A stretch of 63,651 nucleotides of DNA, filler included, from Salisapilia sapeloensis CBS 127946 (GCA_023334545.1; 9 parts of 9 records of this genome joined end to end with filler, not necessarily neighbours in it), one strand, 5' to 3'. Shown: positions 1 through 52,323, counted from the first letter of the whole stretch. Numbers and translations are program-made. Notes: a model not told the origin generated them from the sequence alone.

Positions 1-141
1 GCGATGTACGATCTGATAGTACATGAACTGTACCCGTACCTAGAGATAGAGTATTGACTGACGCCACCGACATTCCGCTTCTCGAGACCCTTCAGAAGCA
101 TTGTATGCGTGATTGTCCGTGTTGAACACTGATAGCGATCT
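1..141. repeat. C1 left terminal inverted repeat arm (141 bp)
   Basis: 1-141 is the exact reverse complement of 4902-5042; first mismatch at 142 versus 4901. Confidence 0.97.
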
Positions 142-651
142 ATACTTGGCAGAAATGGCTACGAAAAGTGTCGTGGACACCTGGGAATGTTAATTCCCAT
201 GAACCCTTTGCCATGTTTGTCGACAACCAATGGATGCTAATGACATCAACACGGAGTCCACATCGAAAAGGTGTGTATTACATGGCGCATGGGAAATGTT
301 GCTCGATGCAAAGATCGTCTTGCGGAAGAGACCCAGAGGACGGCCCTAAGTCGTTGCACACCTGTGCTAGAATCATTTGTTCGAGTCCTTTGTGGTCAGC
401 AGTGCTCCTATTAACTGTAACCCTTTAATCATCCCTGCTTGAAGTATACTCGGAGCGTTCCAATGTAGTTGGCATTCATAAAGCTCACGAGAATTCGATA
501 CCACCATAAGATGGCAAGGAAACCGATCTCGTGGATTTGTTCGAATCACATCGAAAAGATAGCAATAGTTAATACATCCGTCTAAAGTTTCCATCAATTC
601 GTGCTGAAATCAATAACCCATGATATACAACCATACTTTCAATGCCATCAT
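40..651 (-). CDS. Probable small multi-exon gene, product unknown (about 152 aa; 5' end uncertain)
   Basis: Four GT-AG introns (604-636, 388-421, 237-281, 140-180) join exons into one frame: MMALK|HELMETLDGCINYC...MIKG|TRTND...PMRH|HPLVVDKHGKGFMGINIPR|SLSVFN...ILYL*, stop at 42-40. Phases are consistent. No recognisable domain. Confidence 0.45.
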
Positions 652-40022: not shown

Positions 40023-43000
40023 TTAATTTTTTCTCCTAAGAAAGCAGTAATTCAGTTCATGGCTCTCTTTGTCTTTTGCTCTGCATTCGAGTCCACAACC
40101 ATTGCCACACTCGACGATCCTCATTCCACAAACTTTCACATGCCTCAAGTTTGCCTGCGCGGTCATAACTTCCCCACAACCAAGTGGGCAGTAGATCAGC
40201 CGTAGGTTACATTCGTGCTCTTCGTGTCGCTTTAGTTCGTGTGCAGCTAACGTAGACATGCATCGATGAGAGCATTTGACTCGACGCATTGGACAGCTTT
40301 GTTCACGATGCTTGGAGAGATCTGTCTGAACAATATCTTTTTCGCCACATAAAACACAGGACACAAGACGTGCAGAGCATTCTTCACGTCGATGCCTATA
40401 CAAATTTTCTCCCCGCATCTCTTTTCCGCATGATTCACATTTGGCATGTCGCTTGGCACAATGATCTTTCATGTGGCTTTCCAGTGTATGAAGTGAAATA
40501 TTAAGACCACATTGCAGTGGACAAGGCACGAGCCGGCGTTTACATGCCTTTTCTACATGCTCCTGAACTTGGCAATAAAAGATGTGTTTGATCCCACATT
40601 TATTCGGGCATGGAACTCGGCGTAATTCACATTCCTGGGTTTCATGGACCAATCGATGTTTTGCTATTACAGTTTCTTTACAGCCATTTGCACAATCCAC
40701 TCTTCGCAATGGGCAAACTTCTTGCTCATGGTCATCACGTAGGCAACGCAGTAGACCGGTCTCAGGACAGCCATTGCGGCAACGAACCGTGCCATTTGGG
40801 CATTCATACTTTTGATGGTCGGCACTATCGCACGCTTGAATGAAAGAAACAGTATTTGTAGCTGGGTCCAAGCATTCTAGTGGGCAACTGATTAGTCTCT
40901 TTGGACATTTGGACTCGAGATGCTCGGGGTACTTTGCTCCAAGCATAGTAGCACCACAAACACAGTGGACTGTTCTATGTGCGCATTCCTTCTCCATGTG
41001 GAAATTCAGACTTTCAGCAGCTATAACATCGTCACAAGAGATATGGATTGGACATTTAACGCCTCGCTTCGGACAGTCAAACTGTGTATGATGTTTTAGC
41101 TCTTCTGCCCAGAGTCCTTCGATAGGACAGCCAAGCGAACATACAACAGGTCGCTTCATACATTCTTCGCGTTCATGCTTTTGCAATGGTAAAAATTGTC
41201 CAGTAATATCATCATCGTCTCCTACTTGATGATCCACTTCTCTCGTTGAGTATCCACATCCCCATCGACAAAGTCGATGGCCAACCTTCTCTCTTCCGAC
41301 ACAATACATAGATCTTCCTCCACGAACTTGAGTTAGGAGATCGGCGATTTCTCCATTGCTTACTTGACGAGCGATATCAAGAGCGGTCATGTTCTTGCTA
41401 TCAACCACGTTCAAGTCGATGGTACTATGGCGGACTAGTAGTCGAACAGCCTCCAGTTGGTGATTTGCAGTAGCAACCATCAAAGGTGTTCGTCCATCTG
41501 CAGCCGAAGCTCGATTGACATCTGCACCATGCTCAAGCAAGGCTTCAATTGCCCGTAAAGATCCGTGGAATGCTGCGATGCGCAGCGCAGTATTTCCACA
41601 TTTACTTTCGAAATCGACCACCGGTCTATTAGCTTTGCGATCAAGTAGCAAGTCGATCATAAGCATTTGATTACCATCAGCATCTTTTGTATATGCTTCT
41701 TCGATTGCAGCAGCCATGAGTGGAGATATCTCTCCATCCTGTGTCGTATAATCTGCACTTGCTTTCTCGTCAAGTAGCTGCGTTATTTCTTCAAATAATC
41801 TAGCAGCAATTGCAGTATCTAACTTGTCATGAAGTTCTTTTCGTTCCCGCATCTGCTCCTCTACACGCTTTCTCGCCGCAATTTTAACACTTAACTGAGA
41901 CTTCCTTTCATTCCAATCTCCATAAGCTTGTTCGATAACCTCACGCATAGGTTGATATTTGCTTTCATGCCAGCCTCCATTTGAAGGTTGGAAATCACTA
42001 CAGTCGAATCTGTCAAGTGCAAGTTCCAGTGTATCAGACACAGTCATTGGCTCCTTGCCCTCGCTACCATCAAGTGGCTGTAGAACCCAACCATGCAGAT
42101 GGCATGAGTTATTTTGGCTGGTGATAACATCCTCACTGTTTGCAATTGAAAGTGGGCATGGGATATTGCATTGAGGCACGACATGCGTTTTTTGCCACAA
42201 TCGCGCCCCATGTTCTAAAAGCAGAGTTACCACATCGGAATAACCACTCATGACCGCTTCATGAAGAGGTACACGTCTTGTTTGACGCAGAAATGCAAGA
42301 CGACGTTGTATATGCCCAATTAGGAAGGACTGAGCGATGCTGTCGATCAAAAGACTCATGGATTTGTCGGAGAGACCTGGATGTCTCGATAAATCACTTG
42401 AACCAGTGCTCCCTCCTGCAGCTTCCTTCCTTCTCTTCAGCCATGCTTTAATTGATAGCTGCAACAAAGAAGCACATAGTGAACGCTCTTCAGGTGTATA
42501 GCCACAGCTCCCTCCACTTGCAAGTAGCAAATGGACCATACCCTCATTGCCTACACTACAGGCCAATGTCATAGGTGTATGTCCATTTAACGCAACACTA
42601 TTCACTAAAGTGTGCGCTTTTAATCGCTGCTTTGCAATTTCCAGTGCTTTCTTCGCATTCTCCAACTCCGACCGACAAGAATGGACTTCTTCTTGTCGGG
42701 ATGGCAAAGACCTTCTTGAAATATCTAGATCGAACTCTGCCTGTTGCAACCGTTTCTGAAGGTCTGCTGCAACAGCTTGCAATTTTTTCATTTTATCACC
42801 AATTGAATCCCGCTCGACATTTATGTTATACTCACGATCCACTCCGTTGATCCACAAAGCAAGCTTTTCCAACACCGTTGCGCTCGCAACAAACTGTGTT
42901 GTATCGCTACCAGGTTCCAAAGTGAAGGCTGAAACGTACTTTGATATCGAGAGGAAATCTGGAGACCGAAAGCACTCTCTTCTGACCTTTGTCATCACAT

Positions 43001-46000
43001 CCAGCGCAGTAGGCTGACGGCGATATGCTCTCAACTTTTGCAGTAAGCTTCGATCCATTAATAATGCCTGTGACGCATTCCACCATTCTCGATCGGTATA
43101 CTCCGTAGCGTTTCTTCTTCCTCGTGGTAAGACACCCGTAAGCAAACACAGCGCCTTTGTGATGACCAGTACCGTTGGCGTTGGCACATGAACATTTACA
43201 AGTGCAGCAATATCTTGCGTGGTAAAAGATCGGATTGTTTCTAGCATGCGATTCTCAAGGGCACTTGATTCAGCATCCAAGATGTCTCGAGAGCCATCAA
43301 CACGGCGTATTTGAGAGTTCGTATTTGCAAGCTCACGACGAAGCTCCTCTACTTGCACGCTCTGCTCTTCAGTTGCGGTAAGACTGTCACTACAGGCGCA
43401 TATACTATCCTCCCAGTTCTTTTGAGCTTTTTCTGTTTGCTGTTCTGCCTTCTCACATGCCTGGCGTAAGCGTTGCTCCATAGCCAATGCATCAACGGCA
43501 GTATCAAGAGAATTGCTATAGCGAAATAAACTCGAGACGTAGTCGTAGTCAGAGCAAGCAATTGCTCTGAATAGGTGCTCTAAATCTTGCTCTGTCTGTA
43601 GTTGCTGCTCGAGCAACTTCACAATCTTTTCACGATCCAATTGATGTTCATAAGGTAGCTTGTTTCGGTCAGCAGCCAATTCTTTTGCCACTTCTAGAGT
43701 GCACTCGCCGTGACGGTTCACATGATCTGCCTTAGCTCTATGACTTAATAACAATGCCACCAAGTCGACATTTCCAGATGTAACAGCCTCTCTCAAGGGA
43801 GTCCGACCTCTTGAAGTTTCCAAATTTACATCCGCTCCATATTGGAGGAGAATCTCTACACTTTGCATGTCGTTGACAGAAACCGCAGTAGTGAGAGGTG
43901 AAAACCCATTCATAAATTCTTCATTGGATGCGCTAACTTTGTCTTCAAGCTGTTGGAATAAGTAGCTTACCAAGTCTTCATCATGATCTGTCAAAGCCCT
44001 TTCAAGCGCAGATGCATGATGGCGTACACATTTAGCAAGTCTTCGGTCAACAATCCATAGTGCAAGTGGACGGCCACATCTGTTGTCACCAGAACCAAAT
44101 CCACAATTGACAATGCGTTGCCTACATCGTTTCCAGTGAGTATCTTCTTCATACGCAAAAATGCTCTCTGAACATCCAGTAGAACACTGGATCAAACGAA
44201 GTGTACACTTTTTATTTACATGGTCATCCACATGCATTAAAGGAATTTGGCTGCCGCAACGCAAAGGACAATATAGTAAACGCCGAAGACAGCTATTACT
44301 CTCGTGATCTGTTACTTCGCAAGCACGAATGTGAAGACCACACCCTTGGCTACAACGAACGATCCGTTCGGGACAGCTAAATTTCTTGTGTTCATTTACT
44401 TTCTTCGCAACGATTTGAGTTTGACATTTGGAACAGTTCACTATCCTTTGCAAGCACTTATTGTTTACATGATCTTCTAGTTCTTCAAAAGTAAGAGATT
44501 GCTTACATCCTATAATCGGACATTCTCCTACCACTCTCTTACGACAATCAGAAGCAAGATGCCTTGCTTGCGTATCTGCTATAATGAGTTCGCTACATTT
44601 CTCGCATGGAATTGTCCGCTTCGGACACGATTTACTCTCATGAAGAGGTCTATCCGATTTAGCAACTAATGCACCACATCCTAATTGGCATCGATGTGGA
44701 TACTTCTGGCAGTCTTCCTTGATATGGTTCTTCAGATCTCTTGCTAATATAGAGTCATGACAATGTGGACAGCAAATATCACGATAGTCGCAGTTTCCTT
44801 CTTCATGTGTGCGTAAATGCTTTTGAGGCAGTAAAGTGCCACATCCGAGAGAGCAATATATATTTCGCTCTTCACATCCAGTGGCTATATGTGCTTGAAT
44901 ACTTTTTGATAGCACTTGCATGCCACATCCAAGAGGACAGAATGTTGTGCGGAGAAGACATGTTGATAGCAAATGATGGTCTTCTTCTTCTGATAATATA
45001 TAGCTGCATTGGAAATCAATACCTTTGTCGAGTATTTCATGCTCAAACTTGTGCAGATTAATTCTTTCCACAGAGTTACCGAAGCGTACGAGATGCTCTC
45101 CAGAGGTTTGGGAATAGGATAAGATAAAACCAATTTTGGAAACTTGCTCGGACTTCCTTTTGCACTCAGTTGCTTCATAAAGAAGTTTTAAACAAAAATT
45201 TTCAAAGCAGGATATCAAATACTTTCGGGTCAGCGTACTGGACATACATATAGATAGGTCGCTCCGTAAATTCTCGCGTACATCTTCTTCAAACATTAAG
45301 AGACTTTCGAGGTACTCATGGTGACGTTGCCAGCGCTTATCTGCTGCCCTCACACTCTTTAATACGGGTGCTACGGAAGTGTCATTTATATCCCACACCT
45401 TTACCGTTCTTTCGCAAAGATCAAGTGGACAGTGAACTTGTCTTTTAGGGCAATTCCCAATATCCGACAATAAGTGTGTGTCGGCTGCTTGAACTGAGAG
45501 CTCTTCACTACAAGCCCCAGGACAATTTATTATCTGAAGGTCACAATGGTGAGCGTAGTGATTATCCAAAGCACAAAAAGGTAATATGCCAGATAGATCA
45601 CATCCATTCCGACAGTCGCATAATTTGTATGGACACGTATGCTCTTCATGATGTTGTCGAGCATGAGTCGAGCCTTTTAGGACGCTCTTACATCCAATCG
45701 CCGTCCATTTGCAAGGAATGGGTCGATACGTACACTTTTCCGTACAATGGAAACTCATTTGCTCGTAGACAACCATTTGGCCACACCCTCTTTCGCATTC
45801 TACAAGCCTCTTGCTGCAACGCTTTTTTAAATGAAGCTTTCTTTCATTCGCAGCTACTTGCTCTCCGCAGAAATTAGGACAATCGATTGTTCGATATGGA
45901 CACTCTTTTGACTCATGCTCATGCAGCGAGTCGAAGGTCACGGACACGCCGCAGTTTAGACGACAAGAAACATGACGTTTCCTGCAATGATATTTGACAT

Positions 46001-47912
46001 GAAAACTTCGGTCACGAAGAGGCACAAGCTCTTTACATCCCGCATCGACGTTTGGGCACATCACTTTTCGAGCTGGGCAGCTAGCTCCTAGATGAAATGA
46101 TTCTAATTCCGCGATGACTTCTTGTTCGCAACGTTCACATAAGATTGTTCGTTTCGGACAGTGATGCTCTTCATGGATGTTGATAGCATCGGCGGAGGCA
46201 ATAAAGTCGCACCCTTGATGTTTACAGGATTTTGGCTGCGTGAGATTGCCATGAAGTTGAACATATTCTTGGTGCTTTTTGGCGCTTTCATAAGTCAAAT
46301 TTAAATCCTTTAGCACTTCTTCAGCGGCTCCTCTCTTCTCTACGTCAGTTTCTTTTGCCATTATAGTTTCTGCATACTCTATGGCTGATAATCCGTCGCC
46401 AGATTTGGAGAGCAGTGCCGTAAGGCATTTTTCATGCCATTCAAGCCATTCAGAATGCTTTGCTGATCCAGTAGAACTTTGACTTCGAGATGTTAATTTA
46501 TCACGATTTCGACCTACCGAACGACTTGTGTTGCATGATGTCCCTGGGCGTAATCGCGCTGTTTGTGCGGCTTTCATCGCTTCAGAGGCATTAACTTCAT
46601 GTTGAAATGACATGGGGAAGTGATCAGGGACTGAATTATCTTTTAAAGCTTTCAAAAGGTACTTCACGATACTTTTCTGCGAGTTGGAGACTGCATGAAT
46701 AAGCGCAGTCTTTTTTTCGTTTGTCTGGTAATTCACGTCTACGCCGGCCCGCAAGAAGTATAAGCACATTGCATCATGTCCGCAGAAGCAAGCCCATGTC
46801 ATAGCGGTATGTTTAAGTTTCGTTTCTTTATACATGTCAGCGCCCATGGCTAGTAGCTTATCGGCAGCAACTATGCTGTTATTTGCTGCAGCTTTCGTCA
46901 GCGGTGTCCACCCGAGGTTACTTTCGTAATCCACAAAAAAGTCGTAAACGAGTGCATCTTCACAATGTTCTTGTTCCAGCACCTCCAAAGCCTCCTGGTA
47001 TTCGTCGATTGAAAGAGGTGCACTATTCAATATAGACATCATTGCAACTTCATCTAGAAGTGGTGAAGCTAATATCGGTTTTAGCTCTTCGATACAATGT
47101 TCGTTGTTTGCTAAAATCTGTCTAGATTTGTCTACTTGTGTCTGCCACCAGGCAGAATCAGCATTTATCTTTCGCTTCGACTGAAGACGCTCTTGTATCA
47201 CTTTTATAATTGCGTCATTACCTGTTAGCTCTGCCCAACGTAATGCCGTTTTCCCCTTACTATCTCTTAACTCCAAATTGGGCTCATAGCTAAGAACGTA
47301 TTCAACCATTGAATTATCAAACGCATCAGCTGCATGTAGCGAGGTCAAAGTCTTTATCTTCCTTCCGATGTCACTTGTTACTTTCTTGCTATGGCCGGTA
47401 TCATCCATCTTTAATATTCTTGCTTCTGCGATCGCTTTCATCAATGGAGTACACCCACTTCGATTGCAGTCATTGATAGTCGCCCCACTGCATGTAAAAG
47501 CACAATGAAAAAGCTATGAATGTGCATATCAATATGCTGACATATACCTCTTTATCAACTGATCCAATGCGATGTTGTTACGACAAGATACTGCTGCAAG
47601 TAAAGGTGTTTCTCCATACGCGGTCTCTTGGTTCGGATCAAGACCGTCATTTTCAATGAGCCATAGAATCTCTTCAAAATCATACTGACGTAGTGCAGTT
47701 TCCAGTCGCTTTATAATGCGAGTATGACTGGCTTCAGACGTAGTAAAGGATAGGTGGGGTTCGATATCATTATTCTGTGGCCGATGCTTGCGTTTATTAC
47801 CAGATTTCCTATGTAGAGGCGACTCCAAGTACTTGGCCGAGATTGCAGGTAGCTTTGCAGTTCTTATTCTGCTCTTGCTTGCTGAGAACCTTGGCATAGA
47901 TTGTATCGGCAT
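40023..47912 (-). CDS. Giant ankyrin-repeat / TRAF-type zinc-finger protein with a dynein-like stalk and microtubule-binding domain (about 2600 aa)
   Basis: Exon 1 (MPIQSM..GETPLLAAV) is spliced to a 2473-aa ORF. Ankyrin motifs GWTPLTKAA, GFSPLTTAV, GRTPLREAV, GHTPMTLAC and GRTPLMVA. About 33 H..C-xx-R-xxx-C TRAF-finger repeats in three clusters (my count). Coiled coil-MTBD-coiled coil at about 42620-43480. Confidence 0.88.
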
Positions 47913-48154: not shown

Positions 48155-49621
48155 ATGAAGAGGAAAGCAGCAGTCAATCAACATCCAATCGAGTTCCTTC
48201 CTTCTCGATTTTTCTTCTTGTTGCTACGTGAGCCTGCTCATTCTGGTAGCACTGTAAATGCATCACATGTATTTGTTCGACCAACTACAAATTACATGTG
48301 CTTGGACGATCAAATTCTATCTTCAGCGTGTACGAAACCCATATCTCTTGAGATTACATTGCGGTTCAATCATGCGATGAACAAGCAACTTACAGAAGAT
48401 GGTGATCTAAGCAAGCGTTTTTTTTACGTCAATTGGAGAGGAAACGAGTTTCGGAGACGGCAGGTGGCTGCCATTCGGTTAATTTGTGCTTGGAGGTTAC
48501 TACAACTACATTTGTCTCCTGAGGAAGCGATGATGCCATTTTCACATGCAGGAGGTTGGATCGATCCTTCAGGTGGCTCTATTCATCCACAGTTTGGCGC
48601 TGAAGTACCGTTGCTATCAACACTAAAAGCAATACGGAAGGCGATAGACAGTCAGATACTTGACAGTAAACTAAGCTGGGAGAGTAAGACAAACTTTGAG
48701 TGGGGATGTGAAAACCATCGCTTCATCCGCTTAGCACCAGAACTCTTGGTACTATCCATCAATGACAGCAACAAGGATGCAACAGACACAAACTTTAACT
48801 GTGGGTGCTGGCGAGATCTACGTGAGCAGCATAACGTTGTCATGGCTTGCACGGCCAGTCCAACAAGTACCAAGTCTCATTGTGAAATTGCTGGTATCCA
48901 ACGAGTTAATATCTTCAATAGCATCTCACAAGCACCCGACTCAGGCTTTCCAGTCCCACTAGAAGCACAGTCCATTTTCAGATTTCTCGATGTGCTTGAA
49001 TTCGCACCTGGGTCAGTTGTCGTGATCGCTCAAGAGAATGAATCACAGAACCCACTCGTAAGCTATCTAGCCGGCTATCTCATTTCGACCTTTCAATTTG
49101 CTCCCGTTGAAGCCATAGCTTACGTCAGACTACATCTTTCGTCTCCAGGCATATCAGCAGGGCATGCAGTGGCACTGGAGCAGATGAAGATGGAGCTTCA
49201 ATGGTACAGCACGAAGACATCGCTTGACGAGTACAATCAGGTGAATCAAGGCGTGTTAACAAAGCGACTTGGGTCGCCTGTGAATGTGGGTACTGTCAGT
49301 TTGGAACGACAGTCTTTACTGGGTGTCAAGAGCGATATGATGAAACGAGATACTGACGGCTTGCACGGACCGACGTCATTGCGAACCATGAGTCCACGTG
49401 CTTCTAGCGCTCATGCTCGACGTGTCATGAGTCTCCACAACTCACATCGAATGCTTCAAGAAGCGAATGGAAGTAGACGGACAACGTTTTCAACAATTCA
49501 CAAGTATTTGCACCAGCCACCAGCCACTGCTGCATCTCGAGGCGAGTACGAGAGTGCACTCAAGCTAGAAGGTGTGGAGAAGAATCACGACACGTACTTG
49601 AAGTCATCTGCAAGCTCGTAA
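48155..49621 (+). CDS. IQ-motif plus degenerate dual-specificity-phosphatase-like protein (5' exons probably upstream, start uncertain)
   Basis: RRRQVAAIRLICAWR is IQ-like. VVVIAQENESQNPLVSYLAGYLI..FAPVEAIAYVR aligns by eye with the DUSP VLVHCxxGxSRS..AYLM..EA..VR pattern but lacks the Cys and Arg. Confidence 0.55.
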   Translation: MKRKAAVNQHPIEFLPSRFFFLLLREPAHSGSTVNASHVFVRPTTNYMCLDDQILSSACTKPISLEITLRFNHAMNKQLTEDGDLSKRFFYVNWRGNEFRRRQVAAIRLICAWRLLQLHLSPEEAMMPFSHAGGWIDPSGGSIHPQFGAEVPLLSTLKAIRKAIDSQILDSKLSWESKTNFEWGCENHRFIRLAPELLVLSINDSNKDATDTNFNCGCWRDLREQHNVVMACTASPTSTKSHCEIAGIQRVNIFNSISQAPDSGFPVPLEAQSIFRFLDVLEFAPGSVVVIAQENESQNPLVSYLAGYLISTFQFAPVEAIAYVRLHLSSPGISAGHAVALEQMKMELQWYSTKTSLDEYNQVNQGVLTKRLGSPVNVGTVSLERQSLLGVKSDMMKRDTDGLHGPTSLRTMSPRASSAHARRVMSLHNSHRMLQEANGSRRTTFSTIHKYLHQPPATAASRGEYESALKLEGVEKNHDTYLKSSASS

Positions 49622-49726: not shown

Positions 49727-50380
49727 CTACACGATGCATTCGAGTTGCGTTCGCTCACATTTGCGTAAACACTTTTCAGCAATCTCCATCACGTCCTTGT
49801 GCACGTCTTCCTTGCTTTTCGTAGCGTCCACCTTGTACCACTTGGAATACCGCTCACTCTCCGTCTCACTCATAATTGTCATGTGCTCAAACACCGCTGC
49901 CACTTTGTGCTGGAAAGCAGGCGTTTCATATCGTTCATTGCCATACTCGGCTCGATTGGCCGCTTCTTCCACTGGCATGTCCAAGTAGATGATTCCGTCA
50001 GGAAGTGGTAGCCCGAGTTCTGGTCCCCAGCACCATTCCAACTCCATGTCATTCTTCGCAACGGAGAAAGCGACACCGCTGTAAGAGTATCGGTCCACAA
50101 TGACCGTCGTGCCGTTCTTGATCAGCTCTTCCATCTCTGCTGCAGCCTCCCAGCGGTTCGCAGAGAAGAGCAAGTGAATGACGCGGTCATTGAGCGCTGC
50201 CTTGGACGTCAAGTAGCTATTAATGGACTGGCCGATCGCCGTGGTACGATCCGGGAAGTGACGCAAAGCGACTCCATGGCCTTTTGCCTGCAACGCCTCT
50301 TGCAGAAGCTTTGTCTGTGTCGTCTTGCCACTCCGATCGACTCCTTCTAGCAGCAGAAACGCACCTCTCTTCCCACTCAT
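49727..50380 (-). CDS. DTYMK: Thymidylate (dTMP) kinase
   Basis: LEGVDRSGKTTQ P-loop, FPDRTTAIG, HLLFSANRWE, VDRYSYSGVAFS, ERYE. Confidence 0.96.
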   Translation of the reverse strand: MSGKRGAFLLLEGVDRSGKTTQTKLLQEALQAKGHGVALRHFPDRTTAIGQSINSYLTSKAALNDRVIHLLFSANRWEAAAEMEELIKNGTTVIVDRYSYSGVAFSVAKNDMELEWCWGPELGLPLPDGIIYLDMPVEEAANRAEYGNERYETPAFQHKVAAVFEHMTIMSETESERYSKWYKVDATKSKEDVHKDVMEIAEKCLRKCERTQLECIV

Positions 50381-50484: not shown

Positions 50485-52323
50485 ATGCGTCTGCTCTGGC
50501 TGCTGGCTGTTGTCATCACTGCCCCATGCACGTGGGCCCAGCGAATGAATCCTTCGGACCGTATGCGATTTGCTACGTATCCAGAGGAGTCTAGAATACT
50601 TGGAGTAGACGGTCAGAACTTGAGATGGACGAGTGAGGTAGAAGACGACGATCTTGTGACAGATCTTCCAGGTCTGGATAACCAGACCGACGTTAAACAC
50701 CACGCTGGGCACATTGCAGTGGGTGATAATGCCCATAATAAACTTTTCTACTGGCACTTTGTTGCGGCAAAGGAGCCTGAGAATGCTCCTCTCGTAATTT
50801 GGTATGAGAATAGCATCCGATGGTCTCGTATCGATTCATATACTTATGCACGGTCCTAGGCTCAATGGCGGACCAGGATGCTCTAGTATGCAAGGCCTCT
50901 TTTTGTATATAGCTCATGTGCATACACCTCGATAAGCAATTGACATGTCGGATATAGAGGCGTCTCTCCTTTCAAACTCACGAACGCATCCTCGATCGAT
51001 ATGAACGAGCACAGTTGGCATCACGTGGCCAATTTGCTATTCGTAGACCAGCCTCTAGGCACTGGTCTCTCCGTCTCGAAAGGAATCGAGTATCGAGACG
51101 ATGAAAGCGCTATCTCATCTGACTTTTACGATTTCTTATCTCAGTTTTTCGCCAAGCATCAAGAGTATCTCGTCGAAGGAGAAGATTACCCTTCAACAAG
51201 AGATTTCTACATCTTTGGCGAGTCTCACGCCGGTCGATATATTCCTCGCTTTACCAAGTACATACTAGAACAGAATGAAAACATCGCCAATGTAGATGAC
51301 AGTCGCTTCCAAGTGCATATGAATCTAGCAGGTATTGGCATTGGCAATGGATGGGTGCATCCGCGTATCCAGTACGACTACAGTGACTTTGCCCATGCAC
51401 TCGGGCTGATCAAATTGGGTCAAGTGAAAAGTCTGAAAGCAAAGTATCAAGAGTGTGAAGCAGCACTGGAGGCTGGGACGTACTATGCGTCCTCTTGTTT
51501 CGATAACTTGGACGCGATCATGGCAAGTGCTAAGAACCCTCAGACGAATAAACGACTCAACTACTATGACGTTCGCGGCTACGTCAGTAGCGTCCGGGAG
51601 TATCCTCCAGGTCAGGACGATATCGTGGCGTACTTAAACCGAAAGGATGTACGACGAGCTCTCCATGCTTTTGAAGAAGCCAACTACAAGTACAGAATCT
51701 GCAGCGATCAAGTGTACAAGCACTTGAAGCAGTTAGACGGAGCAAGCTCTCTTCTGGATGTCGAGTACGCACTCCAGCACAACGTCCGGACACTCTTTTA
51801 CAATGGTCAGTGGGACCTCATGTGCAACCACTATGGAACAGAAGAGCTGCTGTTGCATCTCAATTGGACTGGCGCTGACGCTTTTCAGGACGCAGACAAG
51901 TATACGTGGCTTGTCGATGGCCGGGACTCTCCTGCCGGATTCGTTCAAGAAGGAGGCAACTTGTCCTATGTCGTCGTCGCCGACTCTGGACACATGGTCA
52001 TGCTGACGGTGCCTGCCGTAACGAAGGATCTCGTCGATCGCTTTATCCATGGTAGAGCGTATAATGATAGTCCACAGGCTGTTGGCAGTCTTAGTGCGAA
52101 TGCGTCTGAATGGGGAGGGGCACAGTGCTTCGATGTTGAAGAATATTTAATGTCTTCTCATGCATTGGCAACGTCATGGTTATGGGTGTCTATTGTGATT
52201 GCCATCGCGTGCAGTGTCTTGGTGGCTTGTGTGACGGCCATGTGCGTTCGCGGTCGGCACGCGAAGAGTGGTGAGCACGAGGTGATTATCCACGGGAGCG
52301 ACGAGGAGACGGCTGCGACTGGG
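50485..52323 (+). CDS. KEX1: Serine carboxypeptidase S10 with C-terminal TM helix (Kex1-like); 3' partial
   Basis: Signal peptide, LFYWHF, W|LNGGPGCSS across an intron, LLFVDQPLGTGLS, nucleophile FGESHAG, GQWDLMCN, SGHMV, then TM WLWVSIVIAIACSVLVACV. Truncated by the contig end. Confidence 0.9.
52183..52323. repeat. C7 right terminal inverted repeat arm (141 bp)
   Basis: Exact reverse complement of 39830-39970. Confidence 0.97.

What the first reader, a model, noticed from the sequence alone, without database searches (positions are those of the whole stretch)
42620..43480. Motor-less dynein stalk and microtubule-binding domain grafted into an ankyrin/TRAF-zinc-finger giant
Between two ankyrin repeats lies a long coiled coil, then IRSFTTQDIAALVNVHVPTPTVLVITKALCLLTG..DREWWNASQALLMDRSLLQKLRAY..VMTKVRRE..SPDF..VLEKLALWINGV (about 42830-43240), then a second coiled coil that returns into an ankyrin repeat (GHTPMTLAC). 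By eye this follows the dynein heavy-chain MTBD pattern (L..I...DI.E......P...V..V..AVC.LL......W...+.LL.D..FL..L..Y....I..+++......F.....L..WV). The CC1-MTBD-CC2 order is the same as in dynein, but there is no AAA ring. In dynein, sliding of the two stalk helices sets microtubule affinity (established). Inference: the ankyrin scaffold may replace AAA4 as the stalk base, giving a microtubule anchor of fixed or switchable affinity that displays about 33 TRAF-type zinc fingers. I know of no description of this architecture; a flagellar/zoospore role is possible.
Basis: partly seen in the sequence, partly recalled or inferred. Interest (0 to 1): 0.85.

Follow-up and report, generated by a model that had tools for sequence, protein, structure and literature searches.

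The report
Motor-less dynein stalk in oomycete giant
A giant oomycete scaffold protein made of ankyrin repeats and about thirty TRAF-type zinc fingers carries a true, full-length copy of dynein's microtubule-binding stalk without any of the motor, an arrangement found in no paper or database searched here, which probably tethers the scaffold to microtubules.

Summary
Window 42600-43490 (minus strand) encodes coiled coil CC1, a helical globular domain and coiled coil CC2, inserted between ankyrin repeats of a gene of about 2609 aa (40023-47912, one 60-nt intron).

This is a dynein stalk by homology, not just by appearance:
- phmmer against PDB gives DNAH7 at E 1.5e-8.
- The family profile hits only dynein heavy chains (best 1.6e-10).
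- HHalign against flap-type dynein stalks gives 98.7 %, E 1.8e-16.
- The AlphaFold model (pLDDT 90) matches entire-stalk crystal structures at Z 17-18 and isolated MTBDs at 2.9 Å.

Nothing else in the protein resembles dynein, and there is no AAA module. The module is conserved in Phytophthora, Pythium, Globisporangium, Saprolegnia, Aphanomyces and Thraustotheca. Its MTBD core is the best-conserved stretch of the whole protein.

It differs from dynein in four ways. Pfam PF12777 misses all 28 members. Both hinge prolines and an invariant H1 lysine are lost. New invariant motifs appear (PRGRR flap, RSLPxRQEE in mid-CC2).

Microtubule binding, fixed versus switchable affinity, and a zoospore role are still inferences. 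I found no published description.

The parts
40023..47912 (-). Whole gene: two exons, predicted product about 2609 aa (ORF residue n = full-length residue n+136)
   Evidence: The upstream ORF 47529-47912 matches the N-termini of the orthologues. The whole product is collinear with orthologues of 2400-2700 aa.
47548..47912 (-). Exon 1 (ATG at 47912; N-terminal ankyrin region)
   Evidence: BLAST matches the first ~125 residues of P0012, P0022, P0004 and others. There are weak Ank hits.
47488..47547 (-). 60-nt GT..AG intron with in-frame stops
   Evidence: Read from the sequence. Splicing gives ...LIKS|GATINDCNRSGCTPLMKA, a regular ankyrin repeat, and reproduces exactly the spacing seen in P0012.
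45375..46226 (-). TRAF-type zinc-finger array 1 (ORF aa 407-690)
   Evidence: Pfam zf-TRAF; CCHC pattern count.
44115..44960 (-). TRAF-type zinc-finger array 2 (ORF aa 829-1110)
43557..44027 (-). Ankyrin repeats on the N-terminal side of the stalk (ORF aa 1140-1296)
   Evidence: Pfam Ank_2/Ank_5. DARPin matches at Z ~17 to model residues 1-150.
43491..43583 (-). Conserved pre-stalk segment (LFxAIACSDYD motif) at the stalk base
   Evidence: Invariant F, I, S and Y in alignment A1.
43236..43490 (-). CC1, outgoing stalk helix (ORF aa 1319-1403)
   Evidence: An 87-residue helix at pLDDT 90-98. It aligns with dynein CC1. The dynein hinge proline is replaced by a small residue (Ser/Asn/Gly or Ala, depending on the alignment; ORF aa 1394-1395).
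42825..43235 (-). MTBD-like globular domain, helices H1-H6 (ORF aa 1404-1540)
   Evidence: VIA-align against isolated MTBDs: 6rzb_C Z 12.1, rmsd 2.9 Å, 146 of 149; 6l4p_B Z 12.3; 6rza Z 12.5; 2rr7 Z 11.0. H1-H5 is the most conserved stretch of the protein.
43086..43133 (-). H2-H3 loop of flap length with the near-invariant PRGRRNA(T/A)EYTD motif (ORF aa 1438-1453)
   Evidence: 16 residues, against 19 in flap-type dyneins. The dynein-invariant proline at its start is kept. For the flap, see Lacey et al. 2019, PMC6629372.
42885..42953 (-). Variable insertion between H5 and H6 (ORF aa 1498-1520), absent from dyneins
   Evidence: It varies in length among orthologues, has the lowest conservation and pLDDT 57-75.
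42600..42824 (-). CC2, returning stalk helix (ORF aa 1541-1615)
   Evidence: A helix continuous with H6 at pLDDT 92-98. It aligns with CC2 of entire-stalk structures. The dynein CC2 proline is absent.
42687..42713 (-). Invariant mid-CC2 motif RSLPxRQEE (ORF aa 1578-1586); it faces the conserved CC1 patch (NES.ADTEAK in the family, TATEEQ at 43362-43379 in the window)
   Evidence: Invariant columns R261 S262 L263 P264 R266 E269, and E42 on CC1. The facing position is inferred from the antiparallel pairing of the model.
42165..42599 (-). Ankyrin repeat (GHTPMTLAC...), helical hairpin, ankyrin repeat (VPLHEAV...) on the C-terminal side of the stalk (ORF aa 1616-1760)
   Evidence: AlphaFold secondary structure. 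Single ankyrin domains align across model residues 1..598 and 1..616.
42432..42464 (-). IQ-like motif LQLSIKAWLKR in the first helix of that hairpin
   Evidence: The pattern [FILV]Qxxx[RK]xxxx[RK] is present at this place in 27 of 28 family members. There is no Pfam IQ hit. This is a lead only.
41325..41744 (-). Further ankyrin block (ORF aa 1901-2040)
   Evidence: Pfam Ank/Ank_3/Ank_4 at aa 1949-2004.
40026..41267 (-). TRAF-type zinc-finger array 3 (ORF aa 2060-2473), running to the stop at 40023-40025

Best explanation
The segment is a true evolutionary copy of the whole dynein heavy-chain stalk: CC1, the microtubule-binding domain and CC2. It is closest to flap-bearing, single-headed inner-arm axonemal dyneins.

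It sits as a hairpin insertion inside an ankyrin-repeat solenoid of an oomycete-specific giant scaffold protein with no AAA+ module.

Most likely mechanism (inferred): the roughly 13-15 nm antiparallel coiled coil holds the MTBD away from the ankyrin base. The MTBD docks on the tubulin lattice as dynein's does, and the basic PRGRR flap reaches the neighbouring protofilament. This tethers the ankyrin and TRAF-zinc-finger interaction platform to microtubules.

There is no ATPase to slide the helices, and both hinge prolines that delimit the MTBD in all dyneins are gone. I therefore expect a passive anchor whose affinity is set by the ankyrin base, not a nucleotide-switched one.

Shown: the homology, the fold, the architecture and the conservation. 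Inferred: tubulin binding, fixed affinity and the cellular site.
For: Sequence:
- phmmer against PDB: DNAH7 E 1.5e-8 over query 79-352 and chain 2606-2879; also DNAH12, DNAH1, DNAH3, Chlamydomonas inner-arm chains and isolated MTBDs 6rza and 2rr7.
- The family profile hits only dynein heavy chains in PDB: DNAH12 1.6e-10, dynein-c MTBD 1.4e-9, and cytoplasmic dynein only 1e-3.
- The exhaustive search of 1.84e9 proteins finds the family first. Every hit below it is a dynein heavy chain or a fragment of one, except one further divergent family fragment (P0107) and one unclassified 201-aa fragment.
- HHalign against 15 dynein stalks: 98.7 %, E 1.8e-16, 182 columns.

Structure:
- The AlphaFold model from family sequences alone has pLDDT 90.3 and pTM 0.70.
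- The 50 best Foldseek PDB matches are dynein stalk or MTBD constructs, dynein complexes, or dynein-sized chains (2,700 residues or more) of axonemal 96-nm-repeat entries.
- VIA-align: Z 18.0 (8i3j, 270 of 277), 17.0 (3wuq, 260 of 263), and MTBD-only matches at 2.9 Å.
- The ESM Atlas points to PF12777 clusters both by shape and by language-model features.

Architecture:
- There is no AAA family in the protein.
- BLAST against full-length dyneins matches only aa 1289-1602.
- The flanking ankyrin repeats are modelled as one solenoid.

Importance and ancestry:
- MTBD H1-H5 is the most conserved part of the protein, with identity 0.61 against about 0.37 overall.
- The family is present from Saprolegniales to Peronosporales.
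- Dynein-invariant P (PP motif), P (flap start), W (H3), K (H5) and W (H6) are kept, and the net positive charge is similar.
- The flap-length H2-H3 loop fits descent from a flap-type axonemal dynein.
Against: - No microtubule-binding assay or localisation exists, so tubulin binding rests on homology alone.
- Pfam PF12777 detects none of the 28 members.
- Both 'universally conserved' prolines delimiting the MTBD (Lacey et al. 2019) are absent in all members. The lysine invariant in the 15 compared dynein stalks in H1, the helix that contacts tubulin and moves on binding, is leucine here.
- The H5-H6 loop carries a family-specific insertion.
- The gene is not in the published list of 257 P. infestans flagella-associated genes. 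That list was built by homology to known flagellar proteins, so this is neutral.
- No orthologue from a downy mildew or Albugo was seen, zoospore-forming or not, so no flagellum-linked distribution could be shown.
Confidence: 0.6

Rival explanations
1. The module descends from dynein but has been repurposed. It no longer binds tubulin. It either binds another partner through its new invariant surfaces (PRGRR flap, EWW/LMDR, KVRREC, RSLPxRQEE) or serves only as a rigid 15-nm spacer within the scaffold.
For: - The H1 lysine and both hinge prolines are lost.
- Strong family-specific invariant motifs are not shared with dyneins.
- A new H5-H6 insertion is present.
- Pfam's MT model does not recognise the family.
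Against: - The pattern of conservation follows that of dynein MTBDs: H1, H3, H4 and H5 are best conserved and several dynein-invariant residues are retained.
- Net charge and flap length are dynein-like.
- A mere spacer would not need the globular tip to be the most conserved part of a 2600-aa protein.
Confidence: 0.28
2. It is a switchable microtubule anchor. Helix registry, and hence affinity, is changed by a partner acting at the stalk base or mid-stalk instead of by ATP. One candidate is a calmodulin-like protein on the conserved IQ-like hairpin next to CC2, acting as an analogue of dynein's strut.
For: - An IQ-like motif occurs at the same place in 27 of 28 members.
- A helical hairpin follows directly after the ankyrin repeat that receives CC2.
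- Invariant patches face each other at mid-stalk.
Against:
- The hinge prolines thought to couple registry to H1 movement are missing.
Confidence: 0.1
3. The similarity is chance or convergence: a generic coiled-coil hairpin with a helical knob. Alternatively, the architecture is an assembly or gene-model chimera.
For: - Generic coiled-coil hairpins (PrgA, Tc toxins, SMC arms) also reach Z 10-13 against the model.
- Pfam gives no hit.
Against: - E-values of 1e-8 to 1e-16 come from three independent sequence methods, and the alignments run through the globular domain.
- The matches that cover the globular domain as well as the coiled coil are to dynein stalks and MTBDs, at 2.9 Å for isolated MTBDs, while the generic hairpins align fewer residues.
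- The frame is uninterrupted for 7.4 kb, and the same collinear architecture is found in more than 25 species and several independent assemblies.
Confidence: 0.02

Closest known systems
Stalk and MTBD of flap-bearing single-headed inner-arm axonemal dynein heavy chains (human DNAH7, DNAH12, DNAH3, DNAH1; Chlamydomonas dynein-c/DHC9); Pfam PF12777
   Same: - Same order: CC1, six-helix MTBD, CC2.
- Same stalk length: about 300 residues, aligned 270 of 277 and 260 of 263 to entire-stalk structures.
- Flap-length H2-H3 loop beginning with the invariant proline.
- The PP-motif proline, the H3 and H6 tryptophans and the H5 lysine are retained.
- Best sequence E-values of all known proteins.
   Different: - No AAA1-6 ring, linker, tail or strut; the stalk base is an ankyrin solenoid instead of the AAA4 lid.
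- Both MTBD-delimiting prolines and the invariant H1 lysine are lost.
- There is an extra H5-H6 insertion.
- There are new invariant motifs.
- The family is not detected by PF12777.
Engineered SRS-MTBD chimeras (seryl-tRNA synthetase coiled coil fused to a dynein MTBD with fixed registry; Carter et al. 2008, used in Lacey et al. 2019, PMC6629372)
   Same: A dynein MTBD on an antiparallel coiled coil, anchored in a foreign, non-motor base that fixes the helix registry. These constructs bind microtubules without any ATPase.
   Different: They are laboratory constructs with only part of the stalk. Here the graft is natural and ancient, keeps the whole stalk, and its registry and affinity are unknown.
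DNAHX, a reported non-motile dynein heavy-chain subfamily (bioRxiv 10.1101/2025.01.18.633724; title and abstract only)
   Same: A dynein-derived protein proposed to act without motility.
   Different: It is still a dynein heavy chain. The oomycete protein keeps only the stalk.
TRAF-type zinc-finger and ankyrin scaffold proteins (Pfam PF02176, PF12796)
   Same: The remainder of the protein consists of these interaction modules.
   Different: My literature and structure-library searches turned up no member of these families described as carrying a dynein stalk.

Membership tests
Dynein heavy chain (motor protein) | Ring of six AAA+ modules with linker and tail | tested here: not met
   No AAA or dynein motor Pfam family in 2473 aa. 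BLAST against ten full-length heavy chains matches only aa 1289-1602.
Dynein heavy chain (motor protein) | Stalk emerging from AAA4 and supported by the AAA5 strut | tested here: not met
   The stalk is flanked by ankyrin repeats on both sides.
Dynein stalk/MTBD domain (Pfam PF12777 'MT') | Match to the Pfam model above its gathering score | tested here: not met
   No hit at E <= 10 for the window segment or for any of the 28 family members.
Dynein stalk/MTBD domain (Pfam PF12777 'MT') | Significant sequence similarity to dynein stalks through CC1 and the MTBD | tested here: met
   phmmer 1.5e-8; profile 1.6e-10; whole-library E 1e-9 for true dyneins; HHalign 98.7 %, E 1.8e-16.
Dynein stalk/MTBD domain (Pfam PF12777 'MT') | Antiparallel coiled-coil hairpin of dynein length | tested here: met
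   In the model, helices 2-88 and 207-300 at pLDDT above 90. Z 17-18 to entire-stalk structures with over 97 % of their residues aligned.
Dynein stalk/MTBD domain (Pfam PF12777 'MT') | Globular tip of six short helices H1-H6 | tested here: met
   6rzb_C 146 of 149 residues at 2.9 Å; 6l4p_B 127 of 138 at 2.9 Å; 6rza 156 of 163. One or two extra short helices sit in the H5-H6 insertion.
Dynein stalk/MTBD domain (Pfam PF12777 'MT') | Two universally conserved prolines delimiting the MTBD (CC1/H1 and H6/CC2) | tested here: not met
   Both prolines are conserved in the 15 dynein stalks (the CC1 proline invariant, the CC2 proline in at least 90 %). The CC1 position is a small residue, never proline: Ser/Asn/Gly by HHalign or Ala by MAFFT. 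No proline is present in the CC2 region in any of the 28 members. The feature is as stated in PMC6629372.
Flap-type axonemal dynein MTBD | Long insertion between H2 and H3 | tested here: met
   The loop is 16 residues against 19 in flap dyneins, and it starts with the invariant proline. By Lacey et al. 2019, cytoplasmic dynein-1 is 13 residues shorter than DNAH7.
Microtubule-associated protein | Binds microtubules | not testable with these tools
   Needs co-sedimentation, microscopy or cryo-EM.
TRAF-type zinc-finger proteins | Pfam PF02176 above threshold, CCHC spacing | tested here: met
   E 4.1e-65, 14 stretches; 27 CCHC units.
Ankyrin-repeat proteins | Pfam Ank families above threshold; solenoid fold | tested here: met
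   Ank_2 E 8.6e-56; DARPin matches at Z ~17.

The most novel reading that the evidence does not exclude
Oomycetes have turned the dynein stalk into a stand-alone, regulatable microtubule sensor. In this reading the ankyrin base and a strut-like IQ hairpin, loaded with a Ca2+-binding light chain, set the helix registry. The giant TRAF-zinc-finger scaffold is then attached to or released from zoospore or flagellar-root microtubules in response to calcium. This would be a new class of microtubule-associated protein, and a natural demonstration that stalk registry can be controlled without an AAA+ ring.
Probability: 0.12. Interest if true: 0.9.

Novelty: new variant of a known kind. Interest (0 to 1): 0.78.

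Why it matters
As far as I could find, the dynein stalk and MTBD have been described only as part of the dynein motor.

- **A natural experiment.** A motor-less copy conserved across oomycetes shows that this hairpin can be moved as a unit into another protein. It can be used to ask whether the MTBD binds microtubules on its own, and what the hinge prolines and the stalk base contribute.
- **A candidate lineage-specific microtubule-associated scaffold.** The group includes major plant and animal pathogens (Phytophthora, Pythium insidiosum, Aphanomyces, Saprolegnia), where zoospore cytoskeleton biology is poorly mapped.
- **An annotation gap.** Pfam's MT model misses the whole family, so every orthologue is currently labelled only 'TRAF-type domain-containing' or 'ankyrin repeat' protein.

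Tried and rejected
- **Pfam.** The segment and all 28 family segments give no PF12777 hit, only weak generic coiled-coil noise. I do not take this as evidence against homology, because phmmer, hmmsearch and HHalign all find dyneins.
- **RNA evidence.** The run search (any library kind) listed no RNA run for this DNA, only the probable source assembly.
- **Expression and flagellar-list evidence for the P. infestans orthologue PITG_02219.** The gene id is in no indexed paper. The life-stage RNA-seq tables are truncated before this gene. The gene is absent from the 257-gene flagellar list of Judelson et al. 2012.
- **Flagellate versus non-flagellate distribution.** Two Phytophthora-based searches covering proteins of 517-4067 aa found no named downy-mildew or Albugo orthologue. 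The tool's word index and length filter, and unknown database coverage, forbid a claim of absence.
- **Other motor-less stalk proteins.** AFDB clusters and the ESM Atlas returned dynein fragments. The few oddly named entries (a RING-domain protein, an 'Impact_N' oomycete cluster) had low TM-scores and look like fragments or fused gene models.
- **Neighbouring DSPn-like gene.** I considered it as a Cdc14 clue to a basal-body role and rejected it, because it lacks the HCx5R catalytic motif.
- **Residue-level tubulin contacts.** Not mapped, because model coordinates cannot be read.

Full report
**Gene and architecture**

The piece carries one very long open frame on the minus strand, 40023..47444, 2473 aa. 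A 127-aa ORF just upstream on the same strand (47529..47912) matches the first ~125 residues of the orthologues. A 60-nt GT..AG intron (47547..47488) joins it in frame to give ...LIKS|GATINDCNRSGCTPLMKA, a regular ankyrin repeat. The joined product has exactly the spacing seen in the Phytophthora nicotianae orthologue. The gene therefore spans 40023-47912 and encodes about 2609 aa. ORF numbering is used below; add 136 for full-length numbering.

Pfam finds 14 zf-TRAF stretches and several ankyrin blocks, and no AAA or dynein motor family. A CCHC pattern counts 27 fingers in three arrays. The order of domains is:

- ANK
- ZnF array 1
- ZnF array 2
- ANK
- [CC1-MTBD-CC2]
- ANK-hairpin-ANK
- ANK
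- ZnF array 3

**The observation**

IRSFTTQDI begins at aa 1404 (43235), LWINGV is at aa 1530 and GHTPMTLAC at aa 1621. The finding's coordinates therefore cover CC1 (aa 1319-1403), the globular domain (aa 1404-1540) and CC2 (aa 1541-1615).

**Is it a dynein stalk? Sequence evidence**

Pfam's MT model (PF12777) does not hit the segment, nor any of the 28 family members, even at E <= 10. Every other sequence test finds dynein:

- phmmer of the 400-aa segment against all PDB sequences puts human DNAH7 first, at E 1.5e-8. Query 79-352 aligns to chain 2606-2879, which is stalk to stalk. Next come DNAH12, DNAH1, DNAH3, Chlamydomonas inner-arm heavy chains and the isolated MTBDs 6rza and 2rr7. All remaining hits are DARPins matching the terminal ankyrin repeat.
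- A profile of 28 orthologous stalks (A2) hits 20 PDB sequences at E <= 0.01, and every one is a dynein heavy chain. Examples are DNAH12 at 1.6e-10 and the dynein-c MTBD at 1.4e-9. Cytoplasmic dynein-1 reaches only 1e-3.
- The same profile, run exhaustively against 1.84 billion representative proteins, finds 20 proteins below 1e-10. All of these that I examined are members or fragments of this family; the three shortest (162-231 aa) were assigned by score alone. The 121 weaker hits were checked by BLAST coverage, and a few also by Pfam. All are dynein heavy chains or fragments of them, except one further divergent family fragment (P0107: zf-TRAF + ANK + stalk start) and one 201-aa fragment that stayed unclassified.
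- HHalign of the family profile against 15 dynein stalks gives 98.7 % probability and E 1.8e-16 over 182 columns, covering CC1 and H1-H5.

**Is it a dynein stalk? Structure evidence**

AlphaFold was given only family sequences. It predicts helix 2-88, a cluster of short helices, and helix 207-300, with mean pLDDT 90.3 and pTM 0.70.

- The 50 best Foldseek PDB matches are dynein stalk or MTBD constructs, dynein complexes, or dynein-sized chains of axonemal 96-nm-repeat entries.
- VIA-align gives Z 18.0 to the DNAH1 stalk (8i3j, 270 of 277 residues), 17.0 and 16.4 to the entire cytoplasmic stalk (3wuq, 260 of 263; 5ayh), and 14.5 to 3err.
- Isolated MTBDs align through the globular part at 2.9 Å: 6rzb_C 146 of 149 and 6l4p_B 127 of 138. 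The related 6rza scores Z 12.5 and 2rr7 Z 11.0.
- Generic coiled-coil hairpins reach Z 10-13 but align fewer residues than the entire-stalk structures.
- The ESM Atlas points to PF12777 clusters both by shape and by language-model features.

The two coils thus pair antiparallel, the stalk has dynein's full length, and the tip has the MTBD fold.

**What kind of dynein, and what is missing**

The H2-H3 loop is 16 residues long and starts with the proline that is invariant in flap-type dyneins, whose loop is 19 residues. Lacey et al. 2019 (PMC6629372) describe this 'flap' as a 13-residue insert relative to dynein-1. It is present in several inner-arm dyneins and touches the neighbouring protofilament. 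Together with the E-value ranking, this points to a flap-bearing, single-headed inner-arm dynein as the source.

Outside aa 1289-1602, nothing in the protein resembles dynein.

In the longer model (631 aa, pLDDT 81.7), single ankyrin domains align across both sides of the insertion. ASB8 aligns 171 residues over model 1..598, and a DARPin fusion aligns 215 residues over 1..616. The stalk is therefore modelled as a hairpin inserted in one ankyrin solenoid. A hairpin has adjacent ends, which makes such a graft easy to understand (inference).

**Differences from dynein**

- The two prolines that delimit the MTBD, called universally conserved in PMC6629372, are conserved in my 15 dynein stalks (the CC1 proline invariant, the CC2 proline in at least 90 %). 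Both are absent in all 28 family members. The CC1 proline is replaced by a small residue (Ser/Asn/Gly by HHalign, Ala by MAFFT). There is no proline after H6.
- The dynein-invariant lysine in H1 is leucine in the family.
- Several dynein-invariant residues are retained: the PP-motif proline, the flap proline, the D/E-W of H3, the H5 lysine, the H6 tryptophan and a basic residue after H6.
- New invariant motifs appear: PRGRR in the flap, EWW..QALLMDR, KVRREC, and RSLPxRQEE in the middle of CC2. The last faces a conserved CC1 patch, NES.ADTEAK.
- A variable insertion lies between H5 and H6.
- The net charge of the domain is dynein-like: +1 to +7, against +1 to +9.

**Conservation and distribution**

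The whole protein is collinear with orthologues of 2400-2700 aa, at 36-37 % identity to Phytophthora, Pythium and Globisporangium and 30-31 % to Saprolegnia and Thraustotheca. Named members come from Phytophthora, Nothophytophthora, Pythium, Globisporangium, Saprolegnia, Aphanomyces and Thraustotheca. More divergent unnamed ones come from environmental assemblies.

Along a 24-sequence full-length alignment, MTBD H1-H5 is the most conserved region of the protein. Its identity to the window protein is 0.61, against about 0.37-0.40 for the zinc-finger and ankyrin blocks. This argues that the tip has a specific ligand.

No downy-mildew or Albugo orthologue appeared in two Phytophthora-based searches. 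The tool's filters do not allow a claim of loss.

**Mechanism**

Shown: the homology, the fold, the architecture and the conservation.

Inferred: the MTBD binds the microtubule lattice and tethers the ANK/TRAF-ZnF platform to it. The engineered SRS-MTBD chimeras show that an MTBD on a foreign coiled-coil base binds microtubules without an ATPase, with an affinity fixed by the registry. This gene looks like a natural equivalent.

With no AAA ring and no hinge prolines, I expect a passive anchor of fixed affinity (about 0.6). The main rival is that the tip has been repurposed for another ligand, or that the stalk is merely a spacer (about 0.28). Support for that rival is the lost H1 lysine and the many new invariant residues.

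A regulated version is conceivable (about 0.1). An IQ-like motif is conserved in 27 of 28 members. It lies in a helical hairpin directly after the ankyrin repeat that receives CC2, where a strut-like element might act on the conserved mid-stalk node. This is a lead only. Chance, convergence or chimerism is excluded as far as computation can go.

**Literature**

Seven full-text searches found no description of a dynein stalk or MTBD outside a dynein heavy chain, none of this oomycete protein, and no mention of its gene identifiers. The nearest published idea is a non-motile dynein heavy-chain subfamily, which is still a heavy chain. PITG_02219 is not among the 257 flagella-associated genes of Judelson et al. 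2012. That list was built by homology to known flagellar proteins, so the result is neutral.

**Verdict**

This is a new architectural variant of a known module, solidly supported by computation. Its function, microtubule anchoring, is plausible but unproven.

Noticed in passing
window 42432-42464 (-), ORF aa 1661-1671: An IQ-like motif ([FILV]Qxxx[RK]xxxx[RK]; here LQLSIKAWLKR, in most orthologues (I/V)Q(L/V)xVRDFxx(R/K)) is conserved in 27 of 28 family members. It lies in a helical hairpin inserted between the two ankyrin repeats that follow CC2. It is a possible calmodulin or centrin site at the stalk base. Pfam gives no IQ hit.
   Followed up: partly
window 48155-49621 (+): A 488-aa ORF transcribed divergently from the giant gene, with 242 bp between the start codons. 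It has a weak DSPn hit (Cdc14-type phosphatase N-terminal half; 29 bits, cut-off 28.2) but no HCx5R catalytic motif, so it may be a pseudophosphatase.
   Followed up: partly
window 49727-50380 (-): Thymidylate kinase gene (PF02223, E 4e-45). A Phytophthora cactorum gene model (P0183) fuses thymidylate kinase with the giant's orthologue, so the neighbourhood appears to be conserved between distant oomycetes.
   Followed up: partly
window 51001-52323 (+), cut by the piece edge: Serine carboxypeptidase S10 (PF00450, E 9e-68).
   Followed up: no
ESM Atlas cluster, row 7 (no locus): A 58-member cluster, mostly Oomycota, is named 'Impact N-terminal domain-containing protein'. PF12777 MT is found in 14 % of its members, and it matched the MTBD part of the model weakly (TM 0.37/0.28). 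It may be a fused gene model or a second short MTBD-bearing protein.
   Followed up: no
AFDB clusters (A0A1I8CX76, A0A0V0QMH8): A 'RING-type domain-containing protein' and a ciliate protein named after an IGF-binding domain align with the stalk model over 250-300 residues (TM by query 0.39-0.43). It is not known whether they are dynein fragments, gene-model fusions or other stalk-bearing proteins.
   Followed up: no
JGI metagenome 3300045300 contig carrying P0040; L001 (P0107); L002 (P0038): Divergent family members from environmental assemblies. On the JGI contig the ANK, stalk and ANK + zf-TRAF parts are called as four consecutive genes, which suggests an intron-rich version in an unidentified lineage.
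   Followed up: partly
alignment A1/A2, H5-H6 insertion (window 42885-42953): The insertion varies from about 23 residues in the window protein to about 55, with poly-Glu and poly-Asp runs, in Pythium insidiosum. It is the least conserved part of the module.
   Followed up: partly
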